Virus record (IMG/VR): IMGVR_UViG_3300017917_001342
Coordinates: 124,001 to 188,000 of that record
Reading direction: 5' to 3' (one strand)
DNA: 64,000 nucleotides
This document shows, piece after piece, positions 3,028 through 39,225 of this stretch. The position numbers and the translations under genes were made by a program. The notes beneath the pieces were generated by a model. It was not told the DNA's origin, did no database searches, and worked only from the letters and a program-made list of their open reading frames with translations. Position 1 is the stretch's first letter, and each line of letters opens with the position of its first letter.

Positions 3028-3116
3028 AGGCATCCGGCGACGATGGAGTGTCGTGCTGGTCTCCAAAACCAGTGTCTGTAAAGACTTAGCGAGTTCGAAT
3101 CTCGCGATGCCTGCCA
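3028..3116 (+). tRNA. tRNA-Trp(CCA) with long variable arm
   Basis: AGGCATC/GATGCCT, CTGGT-CTCCAAA-ACCAG, GCCA. Confidence 0.8.
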
Positions 3117-4001: not shown

Positions 4002-4077
4002 GGGGTCTTAGCTCAGTTGGGAGAGCGGTAGCTTTGCAAGCTTCAGGTCATCGGTTCGATCCCGATAGGCTCCACCA
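4002..4077 (+). tRNA. tRNA-Ala(TGC)
   Basis: GGGGTCT acceptor with G3.U70, TTTGCAA loop. Confidence 0.93.
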
Positions 4078-5518: not shown

Positions 5519-5593
5519 GGGTTTGTAGCTCAACGGTAGAGCAGGTGTCTCTAAAACATCGAGGTGTGGGTTCGAATCCCATCTTACCCGCCA
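5519..5593 (+). tRNA. amber suppressor tRNA (CTA)
   Basis: GGTGT-CTCTAAA-ACATC; acceptor has two U.U mismatches; GCCA. Confidence 0.8.
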
Positions 5594-7117: not shown

Positions 7118-7522
7118 GTGATGCTAGAATGTTTGATCATGGGCGATAGTATTGCTGTTGGCATTGCTCAGCAACGCCCCGAATGTGTAGTTGAAGCCAA
7201 AATTGGTATCAACAGCATGGATTATGTTAATGGGTTGTACTTTTTCTATGCAGTACCAGATGCAAAGACTACCGTGATTAGTCTTGGTAGTAACGACTTT
7301 GACAATAGCGAAACTTATCCTGTGCTGTTGACACTGCGTGAAGAAATCAAGGGTAACGTGTTGTGGATTTTGCCTGCACGAAATGACGAGGCACGTAATG
7401 TTATGCTAACCATTGCTCGAGAGCGTGGTGACGCAGTTGCAGATACTCGTGCTTGGCCATTGTCACCAGACGGTGTTCATCCTACCGTAAAAGGATACAA
7501 AGGACTGGCACAGTCTTGGTAA
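7118..7522 (+). CDS. SGNH/GDSL hydrolase
   Basis: GDSIAVG, SLGSND, DGVHPTVKGY blocks. Confidence 0.85.
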   Translation: MMLECLIMGDSIAVGIAQQRPECVVEAKIGINSMDYVNGLYFFYAVPDAKTTVISLGSNDFDNSETYPVLLTLREEIKGNVLWILPARNDEARNVMLTIARERGDAVADTRAWPLSPDGVHPTVKGYKGLAQSW

Positions 7523-7530
7523 AGAATAAT

Positions 7531-7612
7531 GCTCACGTATCCCCCTCCGCTACGAACGGAGAGTCAGGTAATTGGATGGAAGATGGGGGTTCGAGTCCCT
7601 CCGTGAGTACCA
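7531..7612 (+). tRNA. atypical D-armless tRNA-Arg(ACG)
   Basis: GCTCACG/CGTGAGT, CTCCG-CTACGAA-CGGAG directly after a 7-nt linker, 23-nt variable region, T arm, ACCA. Confidence 0.7.
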
Positions 7613-8267: not shown

Positions 8268-8342
8268 TGGGGATTAGCCAAGTGGTAAGGCACCGGACTT
8301 TGATTCCGGCATACGGAGGTTCGACCCCTCCATCCCCAGCCA
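8268..8342 (+). tRNA. tRNA-Gln(TTG)
   Basis: CCGGA-CTTTGAT-TCCGG. Confidence 0.93.
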
Positions 8343-8348
8343 AATACT

Positions 8349-8423
8349 GCGCCGGTAGCTCAGAGGCAGAGCAGGGAGCTCTTAACTCCAAGGTCGGGAT
8401 TTCGAAATTCCCCCGGCACACCA
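8349..8423 (+). tRNA. tRNA-Lys(CTT)
   Basis: GGAG-CTCTTAA-CTCC. Confidence 0.88.
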
Positions 8424-8428
8424 ATCTA

Positions 8429-8539
8429 GGGCTGTTACGTCAAACGGACAACACTGGGGCCTGTGTAATACCAAGACAGTAATGTCCTCTGGAGTCAGAT
8501 AACCTTGGGATATCGGTTCGATCCCGATACAGTCCACCA
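8429..8539 (+). ncRNA. 111-nt CCA-ended tRNA/tmRNA-TLD-like RNA with G3.U70
   Basis: GGGCTGT/ACAGTCC-ACCA, ATCGG-TTCGATC-CCGAT, two internal hairpins. Confidence 0.65.
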
Positions 8540-8696
8540 TTGATAAGCTGTATCTCTAGGGTTAGAGAGAACAGGGCAGAGTGGGTGAAGCGGGGTTCGA
8601 GTCCCCAAACGATGAGGTTCGACTCCAAATCGTGCAGGTGCAATAGACCGCTGTTTTGATCACTAAATATTCCTGTTAACAACAGGAGTGTTTAAC

Positions 8697-8894
8697 ATGG
8701 AGTTTCTAAAAGGTTATAAAACTGTAATTTTTAACGTATTAGTATTAATTGCAGGGCTAGCACAAATAACAGATCTTGTTCAATTAGTTGCACCAGAATA
8801 TCTGCCAGCAGTAACGTTAGCAGTTGCAGTTGCAAATCTAATACTGCGTTGGGCAACTGATACTGGAATTTTTAAAACTACACCAACTGTGTGA
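8697..8894 (+). CDS. small two-TM holin-like protein
   Basis: KGYKTVIFN...ANLILRWATDT, AGGAG RBS, TAAATA upstream. Confidence 0.55.
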   Translation: MEFLKGYKTVIFNVLVLIAGLAQITDLVQLVAPEYLPAVTLAVAVANLILRWATDTGIFKTTPTV

Positions 8895-9082
8895 TTTAGA
8901 AGGTAAGAACAAAAGGGTAGCGGGCCGTGTGCCTACAGAGATGATGCTCTGCCGAGTAGGGACTACTGAAAGCTGTTTTAAGGTGTCAGCGACAAACCTT
9001 ATTTTTTTACAAAATCATCATTGACAAGTTAGATCAACTAGTATAGTTACAGTGTTGTAGAAACACACTAGGAGATACTACA

Positions 9083-9457: not shown

Positions 9458-9973
9458 ATGAAATACTTGGCATTTTTAGACATAGATGGCGTGTTTACGT
9501 CCAACCGTGTGCAATATGCGTCTGCCAATCCCAACGATATGTGGAATAAGTTTGATCCTATTGCAGTAGACTTTATGAACAAGCTTCACGATCGCGTAGA
9601 CGATTTGCATTTTGTTCTGATCTCTACATGGAAAGAATATCTGCGCGAAGCCGATGAGCAAACGTCACATTGGATAATTGCTGCATTTCGTAACGCAGGC
9701 TTCCGCGGCGAGTTTGCTTCGCCGTGGAAAACTAACCCAGAAAACTTCCCACGTTTTTATGAGCGTGGTATGACTCGTGCAAATGAAATCAAAGAATATC
9801 TTGAAGTCTATGCACCTAGTAACAAAGACTACATTATCTTTGATGATAATGATTACGGGTTTGAAAAGGTACTCGGTAAAAAACGTTGGGTGCATACAGA
9901 CCATGAAAACGGCATCCTTTGGAAACATCAACAACATGCAATGAGCATTGTTGGCCAGTGGGATCCAAAATAA
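9458..9973 (+). CDS. HAD-superfamily phosphatase (Swiss-army-knife RNA-repair type, HAD_SAK_2-like)
   Basis: FLDIDGV, LISTWK, YIIFDD motifs. Confidence 0.75.
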   Translation: MKYLAFLDIDGVFTSNRVQYASANPNDMWNKFDPIAVDFMNKLHDRVDDLHFVLISTWKEYLREADEQTSHWIIAAFRNAGFRGEFASPWKTNPENFPRFYERGMTRANEIKEYLEVYAPSNKDYIIFDDNDYGFEKVLGKKRWVHTDHENGILWKHQQHAMSIVGQWDPK

Positions 9974-9976
9974 TCT

Positions 9977-10050
9977 GCTCTAATGGTGTAGTGATAACGC
10001 AGGTCCTTGGTACGGACCAATCTCAGGTTTGATTCCTGGTTAGAGCACCA
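9977..10050 (+). tRNA. tRNA-Thr(GGT)
   Basis: GGTCC-TTGGTAC-GGACC, ACCA. Confidence 0.85.
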
Positions 10051-10055
10051 AAATA

Positions 10056-10270
10056 AAGTATCAGAAGGTTGGCTTAGAAGCAGCACATCCTTTAAAGAGT
10101 GGAACGAAGTACCACAGGAGCGAAAGATGCTATGTCGTACTGCATTGCAAGTGGCATAGTAAGATAGCTAAGTGGGAAAATACGGATAGCAACAGAGTCC
10201 CCAGAGAATACAATGGTATTACAACTGTAAGGCAACTGTTTTCCTTTGGCGTAACAGCACACTGATACTT
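10056..10270 (+). ncRNA. 23S rRNA H42-H44 (L11/GTPase-associated centre) mimic with ~150-nt insert
   Basis: AAGTATCAG/CTGATACTT stem enclosing AAGGTTGGCTTAGAAGCAGCACATCCTTTAAAGAGT ... GCGTAACAGCACA. Confidence 0.75.
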
Positions 10271-10566: not shown

Positions 10567-11016
10567 ATGAAGATCGAATATCGCAAAGGCAACCTGTTTG
10601 ATACCGACATACTGCACATTGTACACGGTTGCAATGCACAGGGTGTAATGGGATCCGGTGTTGCTAAAATTGTCAAAGAACAGTACTTCGATGCATTTAA
10701 GTTCTATGCAGAACAGTATGATGAATCAGGTCTTAAACTAGGCGATGTTCAGTTTGTACCATCTAACGGTAAAGTAATTGTCAACGCTATTACTCAAGAA
10801 AATTTCGGTCGCGATGGTAAACGCTATGTCGACTATAATGCGATTACCGCTGCAATGACTACAATCAATCGCGTATTAAAACTCGGTGGATACACAGAAG
10901 TTGCTATGCCACAAATTGGTGCCGGTTTAGGCGGCGGCGATTGGGATAATGTTATTTCAGGATTAATTGAATACGCAATGACTGATGTTAAACCTGTGGT
11001 TTATGTTTTAGAATAA
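10567..11016 (+). CDS. macro domain protein (ADP-ribose processing)
   Basis: KGNLF, HGCNAQGVMGSGVA, MPQIGAGLGGGDW. Confidence 0.9.
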   Translation: MKIEYRKGNLFDTDILHIVHGCNAQGVMGSGVAKIVKEQYFDAFKFYAEQYDESGLKLGDVQFVPSNGKVIVNAITQENFGRDGKRYVDYNAITAAMTTINRVLKLGGYTEVAMPQIGAGLGGGDWDNVISGLIEYAMTDVKPVVYVLE

Positions 11017-11072: not shown

Positions 11073-12017
11073 ATGGCTAGTTTACTAGACCCTGCAATAT
11101 TGTTTTTTATATTTGGTATTTTTGCGGGTTTGATTAAATCAAATCTAGCCATACCAGAACAGATTTCTAAATTTCTATCACTGTATTTGCTAATGGCATT
11201 AGGCCTTAAAGGTGGTTTTGCATTAGCTGCAAATGGCTTTACAGGCGAAATTGCATCGGTAATAGCAATAGGTTTACTATTAGCATTTGCTGTACCTATA
11301 TTAGGATATGCTGTGCTACGAACCAAATTAAATGGTTTTGACGCCGCAGCAGTTGCAGCAACTTACGGTTCAGTAAGTGCCGTCACATTTGTTACTGCAA
11401 CTCAATACTTGTCTATGGTTAACGTAGAATATGGCAGTTACATGGCAGCAGTAATGGCACTGATGGAATCACCTGCTATCATCATGGCTGTGGCATTAGC
11501 AGCGTATATCAGAGCAAGTAAGAGCGTTAGCATTAAACATGTATTGCACGAAAGCTTTACAGATGGTGCTCACATATTGCTGTTAGCAGCATTGGCTATT
11601 GGTTTTGTAACAGGTGCTAGTGGCGAAACAGTAATGAAACCATTTGTTGGTGACCTATTCAAAGGGCTGTTGGCATTCTTCCTGTTAGACATGGGACTAC
11701 AAGTTGCCAAGCGCATACCAGAACTTAGAGATAAAAGCATTGCATTGATAGTATATGCTGTTGCGTCTCCTATAGTTCATAGTATACTTGCATTAACACT
11801 GGCAGTGCTGTTTGGTGTATCTGTAGGCAACGCAATACTGTTAATGGTACTTGCTGCTAGTGCAAGTTACATTGCAGTACCAGCCGTATTAAAATTTGCC
11901 ATACCAGAAGCTAACCCTAGTGTTTACTTTGGATTGAGTTTAGGTATTACGTTCCCCTTTAACGTGCTAATAGGTATACCGTTGTATCATTGGCTAGCAT
12001 CATTAGTGATTGGATAA
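11073..12017 (+). CDS. sbtA: sodium-dependent bicarbonate transport family permease
   Basis: LLDPAILFF...SLYLLMALGLKGG, AATYGSVSAVTF, ASASYIAVPA. Confidence 0.85.
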   Translation: MASLLDPAILFFIFGIFAGLIKSNLAIPEQISKFLSLYLLMALGLKGGFALAANGFTGEIASVIAIGLLLAFAVPILGYAVLRTKLNGFDAAAVAATYGSVSAVTFVTATQYLSMVNVEYGSYMAAVMALMESPAIIMAVALAAYIRASKSVSIKHVLHESFTDGAHILLLAALAIGFVTGASGETVMKPFVGDLFKGLLAFFLLDMGLQVAKRIPELRDKSIALIVYAVASPIVHSILALTLAVLFGVSVGNAILLMVLAASASYIAVPAVLKFAIPEANPSVYFGLSLGITFPFNVLIGIPLYHWLASLVIG

Positions 12018-12020
12018 CAA

Positions 12021-12116
12021 ATGAAATACATTCTAAAATTCTTCGCTACATCGACATCGGGTGATAAGAGTTCACACAGACTCTATACTACTAGGTATGA
12101 GGATCTCTGCCAATGA
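12021..12116 (+). CDS. 31-aa ORF translationally coupled (ATGA overlap) to AOX
   Basis: MKYILKFF...YTTRYEDLCQ; stop overlaps the AOX start. Confidence 0.45.
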   Translation: MKYILKFFATSTSGDKSSHRLYTTRYEDLCQ

Positions 12117-12715
12117 CAGAGCCACAACCAAAAGACTTTAGCGATAGATTTGCTTATAGTTTAACTATGTTCTTTCGTTGGTTTGCTGATACATTTTTTG
12201 CAAAACGCTACGGACACCGTGCAGTGGTTTTAGAAACTGTTGCCGGTGTACCCGGTATGGTTGCAGGCATGTGGCAGCATCTGCGCAGTCTACGTAAAAT
12301 GGAACCAGACAAGCGTGGATGGATTCACACACTGTTAGCAGAAGCTGAAAATGAACGTATGCATTTGATGATCTTTATTGAAATTGCAAAACCAAATTGG
12401 TTTGAACGATTGATTGTAATGTTTGCACAGTTTGTGTTTTGGCATTTCTATTTTGTGCTGTATGTGTTTTTTCCAAAAACTGCACATCGCATGGTTGGAT
12501 ACTTTGAAAATCAAGCAGTTGTAAGTTATACACATTACCTGGAAGAAATTGATGCAGGTCGAGCAGAAAACATACCTGCTCCTAAAATTGCAATTGATTA
12601 CTATCACTTGCATCCCGACGCAAGGTTACGTGATGTTGTTATCGCAGTGCGATTAGATGAACAAGGTCATGCAGATGTTAATCACAGCATGGCAAATGAA
12701 TTAAGCAACGTTTGA
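12113..12715 (+). CDS. aox: alternative oxidase
   Basis: LETVAGVPGMV, EAENERMHL, ENQAVVSY, DEQGH di-iron motifs. Confidence 0.93.
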   Translation: MTEPQPKDFSDRFAYSLTMFFRWFADTFFAKRYGHRAVVLETVAGVPGMVAGMWQHLRSLRKMEPDKRGWIHTLLAEAENERMHLMIFIEIAKPNWFERLIVMFAQFVFWHFYFVLYVFFPKTAHRMVGYFENQAVVSYTHYLEEIDAGRAENIPAPKIAIDYYHLHPDARLRDVVIAVRLDEQGHADVNHSMANELSNV

Positions 12716-19281: not shown

Positions 19282-19356
19282 TCCCTAGTAGCTCAGGGGC
19301 AGAGCAGCTGACTGTTAATCAGCGGGTCGGTGGTTCGAAACCATCCTGGGGAGCCA
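19282..19356 (+). tRNA. tRNA-Asn(GTT)
   Basis: GCTGA-CTGTTAA-TCAGC. Confidence 0.93.
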
Positions 19357-26923: not shown

Positions 26924-26998
26924 GTCGCGTTAGCAAAACGTTAATGCGCTGCCCCGCAAAGGTAGAGGACTGTGGTTAAATTCCCAGACGCGACTCCA
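26924..26998 (+). tRNA. tRNA-Cys(GCA), divergent
   Basis: GTCGCGT/ACGCGAC-TCCA, CTGCC-CCGCAAA-GGTAG; D loop lacks GG. Confidence 0.7.
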
Positions 26999-29039: not shown

Positions 29040-29920
29040 CACGATATTAACGTTGTGAAACGTGGATGTTGTGTTTACGCATTGGGGGTTTAGCCTCAAC
29101 AGGATAAGTGCAGTGATGCACCCAAAGCTAGAAAGCCTACATACTAGCGCCAGCAGTGGTCCATCTAAACAAGCCTGAACTAGACTTGACTCGGGTTAAA
29201 CCGAAAGCAAGTCCCGTCCGTAGAAAGGCGGTAGGCAGTAAGTTAGGAATAGTGTCCGAAAGGATAGTTGCAGAGCCAGTCGGTGAGCGATAAGAGGGTT
29301 GGCGCCCAAACACTGTTCAGCCAAACTAACGAATGCTGAAAGTTAACAGGTAGGTACAGAGTCTGAGCCCGCAAGCAAAGGCATGGTACCATTTCGAGAG
29401 TGGAAGGGTTAGGCCCCGGATACTTGAAGAAACACTGATTAGTCCGCAAGACGAAAGGTATGAGGTGTGCTGTATTGGGTATGTCAAAAGCATATTCAGC
29501 AGCCGAGGTAGCACATCTCGGATAGGTTGCAAAATCAGCTAATGGTAAGCTAATTCCCTTCTAAGGAATCGATTGCAGGTTCAACTCCTGTTTTTGAAAA
29601 ATGCAAAGTCTACCTCGGTATGTAGTGTAAGGTGTCAAATACTTGAGGCGCAAGCCAATCAAGTTCAACAAAGCTCGCAAGGCAGCGTTGATTTGTGCTA
29701 GAAGTTTCGTAGCCCGCAAGGCTTAATGGTCCGCAAGATCAACGGAAAACAAGGTGCAGAATAGCTACATACGACGAGTCTACTGCCTGACTCTAAAAAC
29801 GGCGACACTGTTAATGGACTAGGTTACCGCAAGGGACTTAGTGGATGTCGGAAGAAAGCGGCTCGCAAGGCTGGCAATAATGTCCGAAGCGTTAACATCG
29901 AACGTGTAATCTCAGCGTTT
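29040..29920 (+). ncRNA. GOLLD-like large ncRNA (5' boundary uncertain)
   Basis: ~0.9 kb without credible ORF, at least 9 GCAA/GAAA-capped hairpins, GGTAGGTAC..GAGTCTGAG, GAGGTAGCACATCTC and terminal GTAATCTCAG blocks recalled from GOLLD; tRNA-cluster context. Confidence 0.6.
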
Positions 29921-38965: not shown

Positions 38966-39225
38966 CTGTTGCATTTTTAACTGCACTGTGCTATAGTGAG
39001 TTATTGATTATGCGAAAAAAGGTTCGTAGTAGCGGCTAGTAATCCAGGAACCTTGCGGCAAATAAGGTGAGAACGCCCGCCTCACACACCAGCAATGGTA
39101 AAGTAGCGAAAGCGAAGAGATGTAGGAATCTTGTCTATATGGCAAGTTGAAAACAGGGACCCTACTATTTGCCAATACCCATTAAGATCGTCTGTAGGCT
39201 AGCCAAATTTTTAAAAAGGTGTGTT

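What the first reader, a model, noticed from the sequence alone, without database searches (positions are those of the whole stretch)
8429..8539. Mini RNA with alanine identity resembling a tmRNA tRNA-like domain without a message
It has G1-C72, G2-C71, G3.U70, A73 and CCA. An 11-nt segment is followed by GAC, as at the 5' end of tmRNA, and GGAT precedes the T arm where tmRNA has GGAC. The middle is only ~65 nt in two hairpins; one 8-nt loop contains GGC. It could be an SmpB/AlaRS/EF-Tu sponge that disables or hijacks trans-translation, or a highly diverged tRNA-Ala(GGC).
Basis: partly seen in the sequence, partly recalled or inferred. Interest (0 to 1): 0.7.

Follow-up and report, generated by a model that had tools for sequence, protein, structure and literature searches.

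The report
Anticodon-less alanine tRNA mimic in megaphage
A 518-kb freshwater phage carries, inside its tRNA gene array, a conserved 111-nt RNA gene that keeps the top half of an alanine tRNA (so it should be cut out and probably loaded with alanine like a tRNA) but has a different, anticodon-less body, so it is a tRNA look-alike of unknown job, not a tmRNA and not a decoding tRNA.

Summary
Window 8429-8539 (+) has a perfect 7-bp acceptor stem with G3.U70, A73, an encoded CCA and a canonical T arm. It lies 5 nt after tRNA-Lys(CUU) in the tRNA array of a 518,643-bp phage.

I found seven homologous copies (six distinct sequences) in other metagenome contigs, plus three strain variants. These show:
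- **Boundaries:** the unit runs exactly from G1 to CCA.
- **Selection:** it is 84-97% identical where neighbouring third-codon positions are only 51-62% identical.
- **Structure:** compensatory changes occur in the T stem and in a GNRA-capped hairpin.
- **Invariant parts:** the acceptor stem, G18G19, a 4-bp hairpin with loop UGGGGCCU, and positions 67-86.

It derives from a phage tRNA-Ala(UGC). ARAGORN and Rfam call neither a tRNA nor a tmRNA. The loop containing GGC lacks U33 and a purine at 37. No D stem is supported. The tmRNA-like "GAC" is GCU or GCC in most relatives, there is no P2 helix and no tag frame. The phage has a genuine two-piece tmRNA elsewhere and no SmpB or AlaRS gene.

Best reading: a selected, non-decoding tRNA-like RNA that is probably alanylated. 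Its partner and role are unknown, and expression could not be shown. The SmpB-sponge idea is neither supported nor excluded.

The parts
8429..8435 (+). Acceptor stem, 5' strand GGGCUGU (positions 1-7). G3 forms the G3.U70 wobble.
   Evidence: Invariant in all 8 copies, 7/7 pairs standard. Same 5' strand as the tRNA-Ala(UGC) of relative L003.
8436..8450 (+). Remnant of the D region (positions 8-22). U8, GUCAAA (11-16), G18G19 and A22 are invariant. Positions 9, 10, 17, 20 and 21 vary. No stable D stem.
   Evidence: candidate stem 10-13/18-21 is only 79% paired, with no covariation. GAC at 19-21 is GCU or GCC in the more distant relatives. The invariant GG amid variable neighbours suggests a kept D-loop/T-loop elbow (inference).
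8451..8466 (+). Hairpin 1: ACAC / loop UGGGGCCU / GUGU (positions 23-38).
   Evidence: Invariant in all 8 assembled copies, so the pairing is untested by covariation. One low-depth strain contig has G37->A.
8467..8470 (+). Variable linker (positions 39-42).
   Evidence: Positions 41-42 vary: UA, AA, CC, UG, CG.
8471..8474 (+). Stem S1, 5' strand CCAA (43-46), pairing with 8505-8508.
   Evidence: 93% of cells paired. A46->U is unpaired in two distinct sequences. No covariation. The 3' strand aligns with the anticodon-stem 3' strand of tRNA-Ala.
8475..8486 (+). Hairpin a: GACA / GNRA tetraloop GUAA / UGUC (positions 47-58).
   Evidence: 100% paired. Two pairs change on both sides: A-U to C-G and C-G to U-A. 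A third type, G48-C57, occurs in strain X14. The loop varies only at the N of GNRA (GUAA/GCAA).
8488..8499 (+). Hairpin b: (U)CUG / loop GAGU / CAG(A) (positions 60-71).
   Evidence: The CUG/CAG stem is invariant. The loop varies: GAGU, GGAU, GUGU, GUAU. A 1-nt insertion lies before it in five copies.
8500..8511 (+).
   Evidence: Positions 67-86 are invariant in all copies. This segment aligns with A37-C48 of tRNA-Ala(UGC).
8512..8528 (+). T arm: AUCGG / UUCGAUC / CCGAU.
   Evidence: Identical to the T arm of tRNA-Ala(UGC) at 4002-4077. G52-C62 changes to A-U on both sides in 4 distinct sequences. T loops UUCGAUC, UUCGAGC and UUCAAAU all fit the T-loop consensus.
8529..8539 (+). Acceptor 3' strand ACAGUCC (U70 at 8533), discriminator A73 (8536), encoded CCA (8537-8539).
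   Evidence: Invariant. Four different downstream contexts begin right after CCA.
8268..8423 (+). Context: tRNA-Gln(UUG) and tRNA-Lys(CUU) on the same strand. The element starts 5 nt after the CCA of tRNA-Lys.
   Evidence: There is no promoter-like or terminator-like site between them on the + strand. In L038, L050 and L051 a GDSL-like ORF takes their place.

Best explanation
The element is a phage gene for a non-decoding tRNA-like small RNA that descends from a phage tRNA-Ala(UGC).

It keeps the half of a tRNA that processing and charging enzymes read:
- a 7-bp acceptor stem stacked on a canonical T arm;
- the invariant G18G19, probably forming the elbow with the T loop;
- G1-C72, G2-C71, G3.U70 and A73;
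- an encoded CCA.

The D stem and anticodon arm are replaced by a conserved body with no anticodon loop. That body holds hairpin 1 (loop UGGGGCCU) and a short stem bearing two small hairpins, one capped by a GNRA tetraloop.

Proposed mechanism:
1. It is transcribed with the tRNA array.
2. RNase P and the 3'-end trimming enzymes release it exactly as G1...CCA.
3. The host alanyl-tRNA synthetase charges it.
4. It cannot read a codon, so it acts through its tRNA-like top half together with the conserved body. It would be either a mimic or decoy for a tRNA-binding factor, or a non-ribosomal carrier of alanine.

Shown: the anatomy, the exact unit boundaries, descent from tRNA-Ala, purifying selection, structural covariation, and absence of an anticodon loop or message.

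Inferred: processing, alanylation and non-decoding. These follow from established rules: G3.U70 acceptor minihelices are AlaRS substrates, and an acceptor/T-arm stack with CCA is an RNase P substrate.

Unknown: expression, the binding partner and the biological role.
For: Anatomy.

Lack of a tRNA or tmRNA call.

Descent from tRNA-Ala:
- The T arm is identical to tRNA-Ala(UGC) at 4002-4077.
- The acceptor 5' strand is identical to the tRNA-Ala(UGC) of relative L003, and the 5' 26 nt and 3' ~39 nt align with it.
- G3.U70 occurs otherwise only in the two tRNA-Ala of 55 tRNAs, and 54 of 55 encode CCA.

Homologs: seven other copies at 127-144 bits with the covariance model, against at most 34 bits for ordinary tRNAs.

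Selection:
- Element identity is 84-97%, against 51-62% at third-codon positions of the adjacent 65-aa ORF.
- One-nucleotide indels at positions 14-17 and 59/60 exclude a coding frame.

Structure:
- 98.9% of cells are paired. No shuffle of 500 reaches the observed pairing or covariation score.
- Both-sided changes occur in the T stem and in hairpin a.
- An independent third pair type, G48-C57, occurs in strain X14.
- Variation otherwise falls in loops and linkers.

Exact unit: two upstream contexts and four downstream contexts meet precisely at G1 and CCA.

Co-transcription is plausible because no promoter-like or terminator-like site separates it from the tRNAs upstream.
Against: - No expression data. 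No RNA run holds the element, and the two metatranscriptome runs that hold this phage have no contig over it. Short structured RNAs are usually lost in such libraries.
- Alanylation and RNase P processing are inferred from rules, not tested.
- The family is narrow. There are 8 copies from one clade. It is absent from the closest IMG/VR relative at the syntenic site and from a complete 382-kb relative. The comparative signal therefore rests on few independent events.
- The fold of the body is not settled. Segment 18-22 is also complementary to 55-59 (94% paired, two both-sided changes), although that pairing is broken in L038, L050 and X14.
- The phage encodes no obvious partner. SmpB, AlaRS, FemAB and LPG_synthase_C are all absent.
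Confidence: 0.6

Rival explanations
1. tRNA scaffold or punctuation element. The tRNA-like half serves only to get the RNA excised by RNase P, and to define the ends of neighbouring transcripts, and to stabilise it. The conserved body (hairpin 1, the GNRA hairpin, the invariant 67-86) is the functional part, binding a protein or RNA. Alanylation would be irrelevant or absent.
For: - In L038, L050 and L051 the element sits 2-7 nt after the stop codon of a GDSL-like ORF and ahead of a conserved leader.
- The body is as conserved as the top half.
- The layout, with an insert carried on the anticodon-stem remnant, matches engineered tRNA scaffolds (own knowledge; a paper on the method surfaced, PMC3753655).
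Against: - An ordinary tRNA would punctuate equally well.
- G3.U70 and A73 are invariant in every copy, although a Watson-Crick 3:70 pair would give a more stable scaffold. With so few events this is weak evidence.
- I found no partner or target. Complements of the conserved loops are not enriched in the genome, and duplex energy against the phage tmRNA is no better than for shuffled sequence.
Confidence: 0.2
2. A tmRNA tRNA-like-domain mimic without a message. Once alanylated it binds SmpB and EF-Tu, enters stalled ribosomes and blocks or diverts trans-translation, or it titrates SmpB.
For: - Alanine identity, no D stem but a retained GG, an invariant GGAU before the T arm, and no anticodon.
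- The topology resembles a tRNA-like domain with a short stem in place of P2.
- The host evidently uses trans-translation, since the phage carries its own tmRNA.
Against: - Rfam tmRNA models give 10.3 bits at most, and ARAGORN -m finds nothing.
- GAC is not conserved.
- There is no P2 helix between the D-analogue and GGAU. Hairpin 1 is interposed instead.
- The sequence descends from tRNA-Ala, not from the phage tmRNA.
- The phage supplies a complete two-piece tmRNA, so poisoning the same pathway seems counterproductive (inference).
- The phage has no SmpB gene.
Confidence: 0.07
3. An unusual decoding tRNA. Either a tRNA-Ala(GGC) or quadruplet reader using the 8-nt loop of hairpin 1, or an intron-bearing tRNA spliced into a normal one.
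For: - The genome has no tRNA-Ala(GGC).
- Hairpin 1 is invariant, as anticodon arms are.
- Relatives carry tRNAs with large insertions, at L003:11350-11479 and L008:3204-3308.
- ARAGORN run with introns allowed returns a call.
Against: - Loop UGGGGCCU has no U33 and no purine at 37 for any GGC or GGG reading, and the stem has only 4 bp.
- RF00005 and ARAGORN fail to call it.
- The ARAGORN intron call is 'tRNA-Tyr(GUA)' with the anticodon split by a 16-nt 'intron'. Systematic deletions gave 303 calls with many different anticodons, so there is no unique solution.
- The body contains no conserved NGC flanked like an anticodon.
- The D stem 3' strand and the anticodon stem 5' strand of the ancestor are gone, so this is not a simple insertion.
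Confidence: 0.06
4. A decaying tRNA-Ala pseudogene with no function.
For: - It is restricted to a narrow clade and absent from the nearest other relatives.
- It evolves faster than the neighbouring tRNA-Lys, which is identical in the window, L014 and L015.
Against: - It is 84-97% identical where synonymous-type sites are 51-62% identical.
- Compensatory changes occurred in three base pairs, one of them twice independently.
- The acceptor stem, the CCA and two long segments are invariant.
- It persists through several rearrangements of both flanks.
Confidence: 0.04

Closest known systems
Bacterial/phage tRNA-Ala(UGC), the likely ancestor
   Same: The acceptor stem has G1-C72, G2-C71, G3.U70, A73 and an encoded CCA. 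The T arm is identical to the phage's own tRNA-Ala at 4002-4077. G18G19 are kept. The segment before the T arm aligns with the 3' strand of the anticodon stem plus the variable loop.
   Different: It has no D stem and no 7-nt anticodon loop, and about 46 nt of new sequence replace positions ~26-36. The length is 111 nt. tRNA models do not call it.
tRNA-like domain of tmRNA (SsrA), including the phage's own two-piece tmRNA at G000:C1:311343-311751
   Same: Alanine identity, no D stem, a G-rich D-loop analogue, GGAU where tmRNA has GGAC before the T arm, and no anticodon. This is what it might work like.
   Different: It has no conserved UUCGAC/GAC, no P2 helix, no pseudoknots, no resume codon and no tag frame. 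Covariance-model scores are far below threshold. Its sequence ancestry is tRNA-Ala.
Phage T4 species 1 and species 2 RNAs (rnaC, rnaD)
   Same: They are small stable RNAs encoded on the same strand at the end of a phage tRNA cluster, next to tRNA genes. rnaC has a T-arm-like CCGGG/UUCGAAU/CCCGG hairpin near its 3' end, and rnaD ends in CCA. By my own knowledge their function is still unknown.
   Different: I found no sequence similarity: a BLAST search of the phage collection hit only tRNA genes. Neither T4 RNA shows the perfect 7-bp G3.U70 acceptor stem seen here.
Engineered acceptor/T-arm minihelices and tRNA scaffolds (Schimmel-type alanine minihelices; Ponchon-Dardel scaffolds)
   Same: An acceptor/T-arm stack with G3.U70 is sufficient for AlaRS in vitro. 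Foreign RNA carried on the anticodon stem is processed and stabilised like a tRNA (own knowledge).
   Different: Those are laboratory constructs. This is a natural gene under selection, and its D region is also remodelled.

Membership tests
tmRNA (SsrA) tRNA-like domain | Acceptor stem with G3.U70, A73 and CCA, plus a T arm | tested here: met
   These features are shared with every tRNA-Ala, so they do not discriminate.
tmRNA (SsrA) tRNA-like domain | Conserved D-loop analogue ending in UUCGAC (the 'GAC') | tested here: not met
   GAC occurs only in the window lineage (window, L046, close strain variants). It is GCU or GCC in 6 of 8 copies. No UUCGAC is present.
tmRNA (SsrA) tRNA-like domain | GGAC immediately 5' of the T arm | tested here: inconclusive
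   GGAU is invariant, but it aligns equally well with the variable loop AGGUC of tRNA-Ala.
tmRNA (SsrA) tRNA-like domain | P2 helix joining the segment after the D-analogue to the segment before GGAC | tested here: not met
   Positions 22-26 and 75-79 are not complementary. The 3' segment pairs with 43-46 instead, and hairpin 1 is interposed.
tmRNA (SsrA) tRNA-like domain | Resume codon with a tag reading frame, and pseudoknots | tested here: not met
   ARAGORN -m finds none, even with lowered thresholds. 111 nt leaves no room for them.
tmRNA (SsrA) tRNA-like domain | Score above threshold with curated covariance models | tested here: not met
   The best score is 10.3 bits, against a gathering score of 47. 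The phage's real tmRNA scores 101 bits.
tmRNA (SsrA) tRNA-like domain | Binds SmpB | not testable with these tools
   No RNA-protein docking tool is available. The phage has no SmpB gene.
Canonical decoding tRNA (tRNA-Ala GGC) | Cloverleaf recognised by RF00005 or ARAGORN | tested here: not met
Canonical decoding tRNA (tRNA-Ala GGC) | A 7-nt anticodon loop with U33 and a purine at 37 on a 5-bp stem | tested here: not met
   The loop UGGGGCCU has 8 nt on a 4-bp stem. With GGC as the anticodon, position 33 is G and position 37 is C.
Canonical decoding tRNA (tRNA-Ala GGC) | D stem of 3-4 bp | tested here: not met
   Candidate 10-13/18-21 is 79% paired with no covariation. The window-specific GUC/GAC register is lost in relatives.
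Canonical decoding tRNA (tRNA-Ala GGC) | Aminoacylated by AlaRS | not testable with these tools
   Predicted from G3.U70, A73 and G2-C71. A bona fide tRNA-Ala(UGC) in relative L003 has the same 5' acceptor strand.
Intron-containing tRNA | One contiguous insert whose removal restores a cloverleaf with a conserved anticodon | tested here: not met
   The ARAGORN -i call is an artefact (Tyr GUA split by 16 nt). A deletion scan gives 303 calls with many different anticodons.
Phage tRNA-cluster stable RNAs (T4 rnaC/rnaD type) | Encoded within or next to the tRNA cluster on the same strand, with tRNA-like 3' features | tested here: met
Phage tRNA-cluster stable RNAs (T4 rnaC/rnaD type) | Accumulates as a discrete stable RNA processed with the tRNAs | not testable with these tools
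   No RNA run holds the element.
Phage tRNA-cluster stable RNAs (T4 rnaC/rnaD type) | Sequence homology to rnaC or rnaD | tested here: not met
   A BLAST search of 50,697 phage records hit only tRNA genes.

The most novel reading that the evidence does not exclude
This would be a natural, phage-encoded, alanine-accepting tRNA mimic without an anticodon or a message. It would act on the translation apparatus in one of three ways:
- as a message-less counterpart of the tmRNA tRNA-like domain that engages SmpB, EF-Tu and stalled ribosomes, possibly in concert with the phage's own two-piece tmRNA;
- as a decoy for a host tRNA-targeting defence;
- as a dedicated non-ribosomal alanine donor.

A possible conformational switch, 18-22 against 47-50 competing for 55-59, could gate its activity.
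Probability: 0.12. Interest if true: 0.8.

Novelty: new variant of a known kind. Interest (0 to 1): 0.47.

Why it matters
Huge phages carry dozens of tRNAs, and these are now known to counter host defences that target tRNA. What the non-canonical, tRNA-like genes in those arrays do is largely unexplored. The T4 species 1 and 2 RNAs remain unexplained after decades.

This element is a clean case. It has exact boundaries, clear ancestry from tRNA-Ala, evidence of selection, a retained synthetase identity set and a body that cannot decode.

If it is alanylated in vivo, it would be a natural version of the alanine minihelix experiments. It would also be a new kind of aminoacyl-RNA with a non-decoding role. 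If it is not alanylated, it is a natural tRNA scaffold that presents a small conserved RNA domain.

Either way it is short enough to test directly. It also shows that tRNA finders miss selected tRNA-derived genes in phage arrays.

Tried and rejected
**Searches for more copies**
- Exact or gapped pattern scans of IMG/VR contigs with the 5' end, with the acceptor/T-arm frame and with the invariant core found 0 matches.
- The same core pattern in 185,579 prokaryote genomes found 0 matches.
- BLAST against 50,697 phage records hit only tRNA-Gln/Lys-type matches.
- BLAST and covariance-model searches of five related virus records, including a complete 382-kb one, found only ordinary tRNAs at 28-34 bits.
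- The closest IMG/VR relative, L003, has a small ORF where the element would be.

**Expression**
- No RNA run holds the element.
- In the two metatranscriptome runs, phage-identical contigs lie at 7125-7387, 8665-8922 and 9874-10112, but none lies over the element. This is not evidence of silence.

**Partners encoded by the phage**
- SmpB, AlaRS, FemAB and the MprF-type LPG_synthase_C domain were all absent.

**Target search by complementarity**
- Complements of the conserved loops are not enriched in the genome.
- Duplex energy with the phage tmRNA (-65 kcal/mol) is no better than for shuffled sequences (mean -67).

**Thermodynamics**
- The MFE z-score of the single sequence is -0.24, so it is uninformative. 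MFE predictions also melt the T arm in relatives.

**Structures considered**
- The D-like stem GUC/GAC is lost in relatives.
- The long-range helix 18-22/55-59 is 94% paired with two both-sided changes. It is mutually exclusive with the better-supported hairpin a, and it is broken in L038, L050 and X14. I left it as a possible alternative conformer.
- A permuted-tmRNA reading of 8509-8600 was rejected. The acceptor 3' strand is already satisfied by 8429-8435, and ORF insertions separate the element from the downstream RNA in L015, L051, L052 and X14.

**Intron reading**
- The ARAGORN -i call and the deletion scan were rejected as artefacts.

**Literature**
- Three searches found no description of this RNA.

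Full report
**Setting.** The window is bases 124,001-188,000 of a 518,643-bp IMG/VR virus record with direct terminal repeats. The phage recurs in pond, lake and other freshwater metagenomes from 13 studies. The window holds 46 ARAGORN tRNAs, all on the + strand. It also holds a GOLLD RNA and a skipping-rope RNA. The whole genome has 55 tRNAs, and 54 of them encode CCA. Genes scattered through the array include a HAD domain of the 'Swiss Army Knife' RNA-repair proteins, a Macro domain, an SbtA-type transporter and an alternative oxidase.

**The observation.** Element positions are window coordinate minus 8428. At 8429-8539 the sequence reads GGGCUGU ... AUCGG-UUCGAUC-CCGAU-ACAGUCC-A-CCA.
- This gives a perfect 7-bp acceptor stem with G3.U70, then A73 and CCA, with a canonical T arm abutting the stem.
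- The element begins 5 nt after the CCA of tRNA-Lys(CUU).
- The body between the acceptor strand and the T arm is 76 nt and holds three hairpins plus a closing stem, not two hairpins.
- An acceptor/T-arm/CCA architecture of 95-139 nt turns up 0.05 times per genome in 40 resampled genomes.
- G3.U70 occurs otherwise only in the two tRNA-Ala(UGC) genes.

**What the standard detectors say.** ARAGORN calls neither a tRNA nor a tmRNA, even at lowered thresholds. Rfam at gathering thresholds reports nothing there. At E <= 10 the only match is tmRNA_permuted at 10.3 bits (E 4.7, gathering score 47). That match rests on the T arm and ACCA and runs into the downstream spacer. The single-sequence fold is no more stable than shuffled sequence (z = -0.24).

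**Relatives.** Pattern scans of the viral and genome collections and a BLAST search of the phage database found no other copy. Searching for the neighbouring HAD protein in metagenome contigs gave two copies, in L014 and L015. Looking up homologs of the adjacent 65-aa ORF gave five more, in L038, L046, L050, L051 and L052. A covariance model scores these at 127-144 bits, while ordinary tRNAs score at most 34. Contigs from four further sequencing runs add three strain variants, and two more strains show no change in the element. More distant relatives lack it. These include the closest IMG/VR contig at the syntenic position, a complete 382-kb relative, and contigs whose 65-aa ORF is only 72-74% identical.

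**Unit boundaries.** Upstream of G1 there are two unrelated contexts. One is tRNA-Lys plus 5-6 nt. The other is the AT-rich end of a GDSL-like ORF. Downstream of CCA there are four contexts, three of them insertions of other DNA. Homology starts exactly at G1 and stops exactly at CCA. The gene therefore behaves as an independent cassette with the boundaries of a mature tRNA.

**Selection.** Between lineages, third-codon positions of the adjacent ORF are 51-62% identical, while the element is 84-97% identical. Single-nucleotide indels at positions 14-17 and 59/60 rule out a coding explanation. The G.U pair and the T-loop motif fix the strand as +.

**Structure from comparison**.

| Part | Positions | Comparative evidence |
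|---|---|---|
| Acceptor stem | 1-7 / 101-107 | Invariant |
| T stem | 84-88 / 96-100 | One pair changes G-C to A-U on both sides. All three T-loop variants fit the consensus. |
| Hairpin a (GACA-GUAA-UGUC) | 47-58 | Always paired. Two adjacent pairs change on both sides, and a third pair type (G48-C57) arose independently in strain X14. The tetraloop varies only at the N of GNRA. |
| Hairpin b | 60-71 | Invariant CUG/CAG stem with a freely varying 4-nt loop |
| Hairpin 1 (ACAC-UGGGGCCU-GUGU) | 23-38 | Invariant in all assembled copies, so the pairing is untested |
| Segment 67-86 | 67-86 | Invariant |
| Stem S1 | 43-46 / 77-80 | Plausible, with one unpaired cell in two distinct sequences and no covariation |

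Overall 98.9% of cells are paired, and no shuffle of 500 reaches the observed pairing or covariation score. With seven distinct, related sequences this supports the fold but does not prove it.

The D-like stem suggested by the window sequence (GUC/GAC) is not conserved (79% paired, no covariation). G18G19 are invariant amid variable neighbours, which fits a retained D-loop/T-loop elbow. This last point is an inference.

One puzzle remains. Segment 18-22 is also complementary to 55-59, and it changed in step with it (94% paired). That helix excludes hairpin a. It is broken in L038, L050 and X14, so I treat it as a possible alternative conformer.

**Ancestry.**
- The T arm is identical to that of tRNA-Ala(UGC) at 4002-4077.
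- The 5' acceptor strand GGGCUGU is identical to that of the tRNA-Ala(UGC) in relative L003.
- The first ~26 nt, through GG and AACAC, align with that gene.
- The last ~39 nt, from AA-CCUUG-GGAU onward, also align with it.
- About 46 nt of unrelated sequence stand where positions ~26-36 of the tRNA would be.
- The element is therefore a remodelled tRNA-Ala, not a relative of the phage tmRNA.

- *tmRNA-like domain.* The alanine identity and the absence of a D stem fit, and GGAU is invariant. Against it, GAC is confined to the window lineage, there is no P2 helix, tag frame or pseudoknot, and the models do not score. The phage has its own genuine two-piece tmRNA at genome 311,343-311,751 (-). 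Its tag is ANDNVAPSYALAA, and it scores 101 bits against Rfam tmRNA_permuted and 97 bits against alpha_tmRNA. The phage has no SmpB gene.
- *Decoding tRNA-Ala(GGC).* The 8-nt loop has G where U33 should be and C where a purine at 37 should be, and it sits on a 4-bp stem. No other conserved loop offers an anticodon.
- *Intron-bearing tRNA.* This also fails. No single excision restores a unique cloverleaf.

**Most likely mechanism.** The RNA is co-transcribed with the array. No promoter-like or terminator-like site separates it from the upstream tRNAs. It would be excised like a tRNA and, by the well-established G3.U70/A73 rule, alanylated by the host synthetase. It cannot decode. What the conserved body binds is unknown. 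The phage encodes none of the obvious partners I could test: SmpB, AlaRS, FemAB-type transferases and MprF-type transferases are all absent. Simple complementarity searches gave nothing. Expression could not be assessed.

I put 0.6 on 'selected, non-decoding, probably alanylated tRNA-Ala-derived RNA'. I put 0.2 on 'tRNA scaffold or punctuation in which charging is irrelevant'. The tmRNA-mimic, decoding-tRNA and pseudogene readings each get below 0.1.

**Comparison and novelty.** The nearest natural analogues are the T4 species 1 and 2 RNAs. These are small stable RNAs at the end of the T4 tRNA cluster, and their function is still unknown. There is no sequence similarity to them. The element is a new variant of the known kind 'tRNA-derived, tRNA-like RNA genes in phage tRNA clusters'. 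It stands out for its intact alanine identity set and its well-defined conserved body. It is of moderate interest as it stands. It would be of high interest if shown to be an aminoacylated non-decoding effector.

Noticed in passing
G000:C1:311343-311751 (- strand; outside the window; locus L055:591-959): The phage encodes its own two-piece (permuted) tmRNA with tag ANDNVAPSYALAA. It scores 101 bits against Rfam tmRNA_permuted and 97 bits against alpha_tmRNA. No SmpB gene is present in the genome. The alpha-type tmRNA sits oddly beside the cyanophage-like SbtA and PTOX genes when one tries to guess the host.
   Followed up: yes
window 8540-8696: The 157 nt between the element and the 65-aa ORF are 84-92% conserved, against 51-62% at third-codon positions. 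They contain hairpin CUCUA-GGGU-UAGAG (C-G to U-A in L038) and two T-arm-like hairpins. These are GGGG-UUCGAGU-CCCC and GG-UUCGACU-CC, the latter with an outer CGA/UCG to CAG/CUG swap in L050. A hairpin also overlaps the ribosome-binding site. The region travels with the ORF, not with the element. It is probably a second structured RNA or leader.
   Followed up: partly
window 7531-7612: Another 82-nt unit with a 7-bp acceptor stem (GCUCACG/CGUGAGU), T arm GGGGG-UUCGAGU-CCCUC, A73 and CCA. Its body is non-canonical, and neither ARAGORN nor Rfam calls it. I found no homolog in the fetched loci.
   Followed up: partly
window 3028-3116: An 89-nt tRNA with anticodon CCA, which ARAGORN calls 'Trp'. 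It has a long D stem, a long variable arm capped by a GUAA tetraloop, and G73. This is a Ser/Sec-like architecture on a UGG-reading anticodon. Rfam's tRNA model does not report it.
   Followed up: no
window 5519-5593: A tRNA with anticodon CUA (amber suppressor type, labelled 'Pyl' by ARAGORN). It hints that TAG may be read through or recoded in part of the phage's genes. I did not test this.
   Followed up: no
window 29462-29918 and 39057-39173: A GOLLD RNA (234 bits) has tRNA-Arg(UCU) at 29527-29600 lying inside its coordinates. There is also a skipping-rope RNA (46.9 bits). The tRNA array is rich in large and small structured RNAs.
   Followed up: no
L003:11350-11479: In a related phage contig the tRNA-Asn(GUU) is interrupted in the anticodon loop by about 55 nt. 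The insert itself folds as a 4-bp stem next to a T-arm-like hairpin (GGAG-UUCGAAA-CUCC). It is either a dead gene or an unusual small intron shaped like a tRNA minihelix. The ortholog in the window (19282-19356) is intact.
   Followed up: no
L008:3204-3308 and L022:4578-4682: These are 105-nt tRNA-like genes in more distant relatives, missed by ARAGORN. They carry a ~29-nt insertion in the D loop and an 8-nt loop UUGGCUAA containing GGC. L008 has G3.U70 but L022 has A3-U70. They are not homologous to the element in the body.
   Followed up: partly
window 9458-9973, 10567-11016, 11073-12017, 12113-12715: Host-like and RNA-repair-like genes are embedded among the tRNAs: HAD_SAK_2, a Macro domain, an SbtA-type bicarbonate transporter and an alternative (plastoquinol-type) oxidase. 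GIY-YIG/NUMOD3 homing-endonuclease-like ORFs and other small ORFs come and go between the RNA genes in relatives.
   Followed up: partly
window 26924-26995: A tRNA reported only by Rfam (46.6 bits). It has the anticodon loop CCGCAAA (C at position 33), an odd T loop (UUAAAUU) and a 3' end of UCCA.
   Followed up: no
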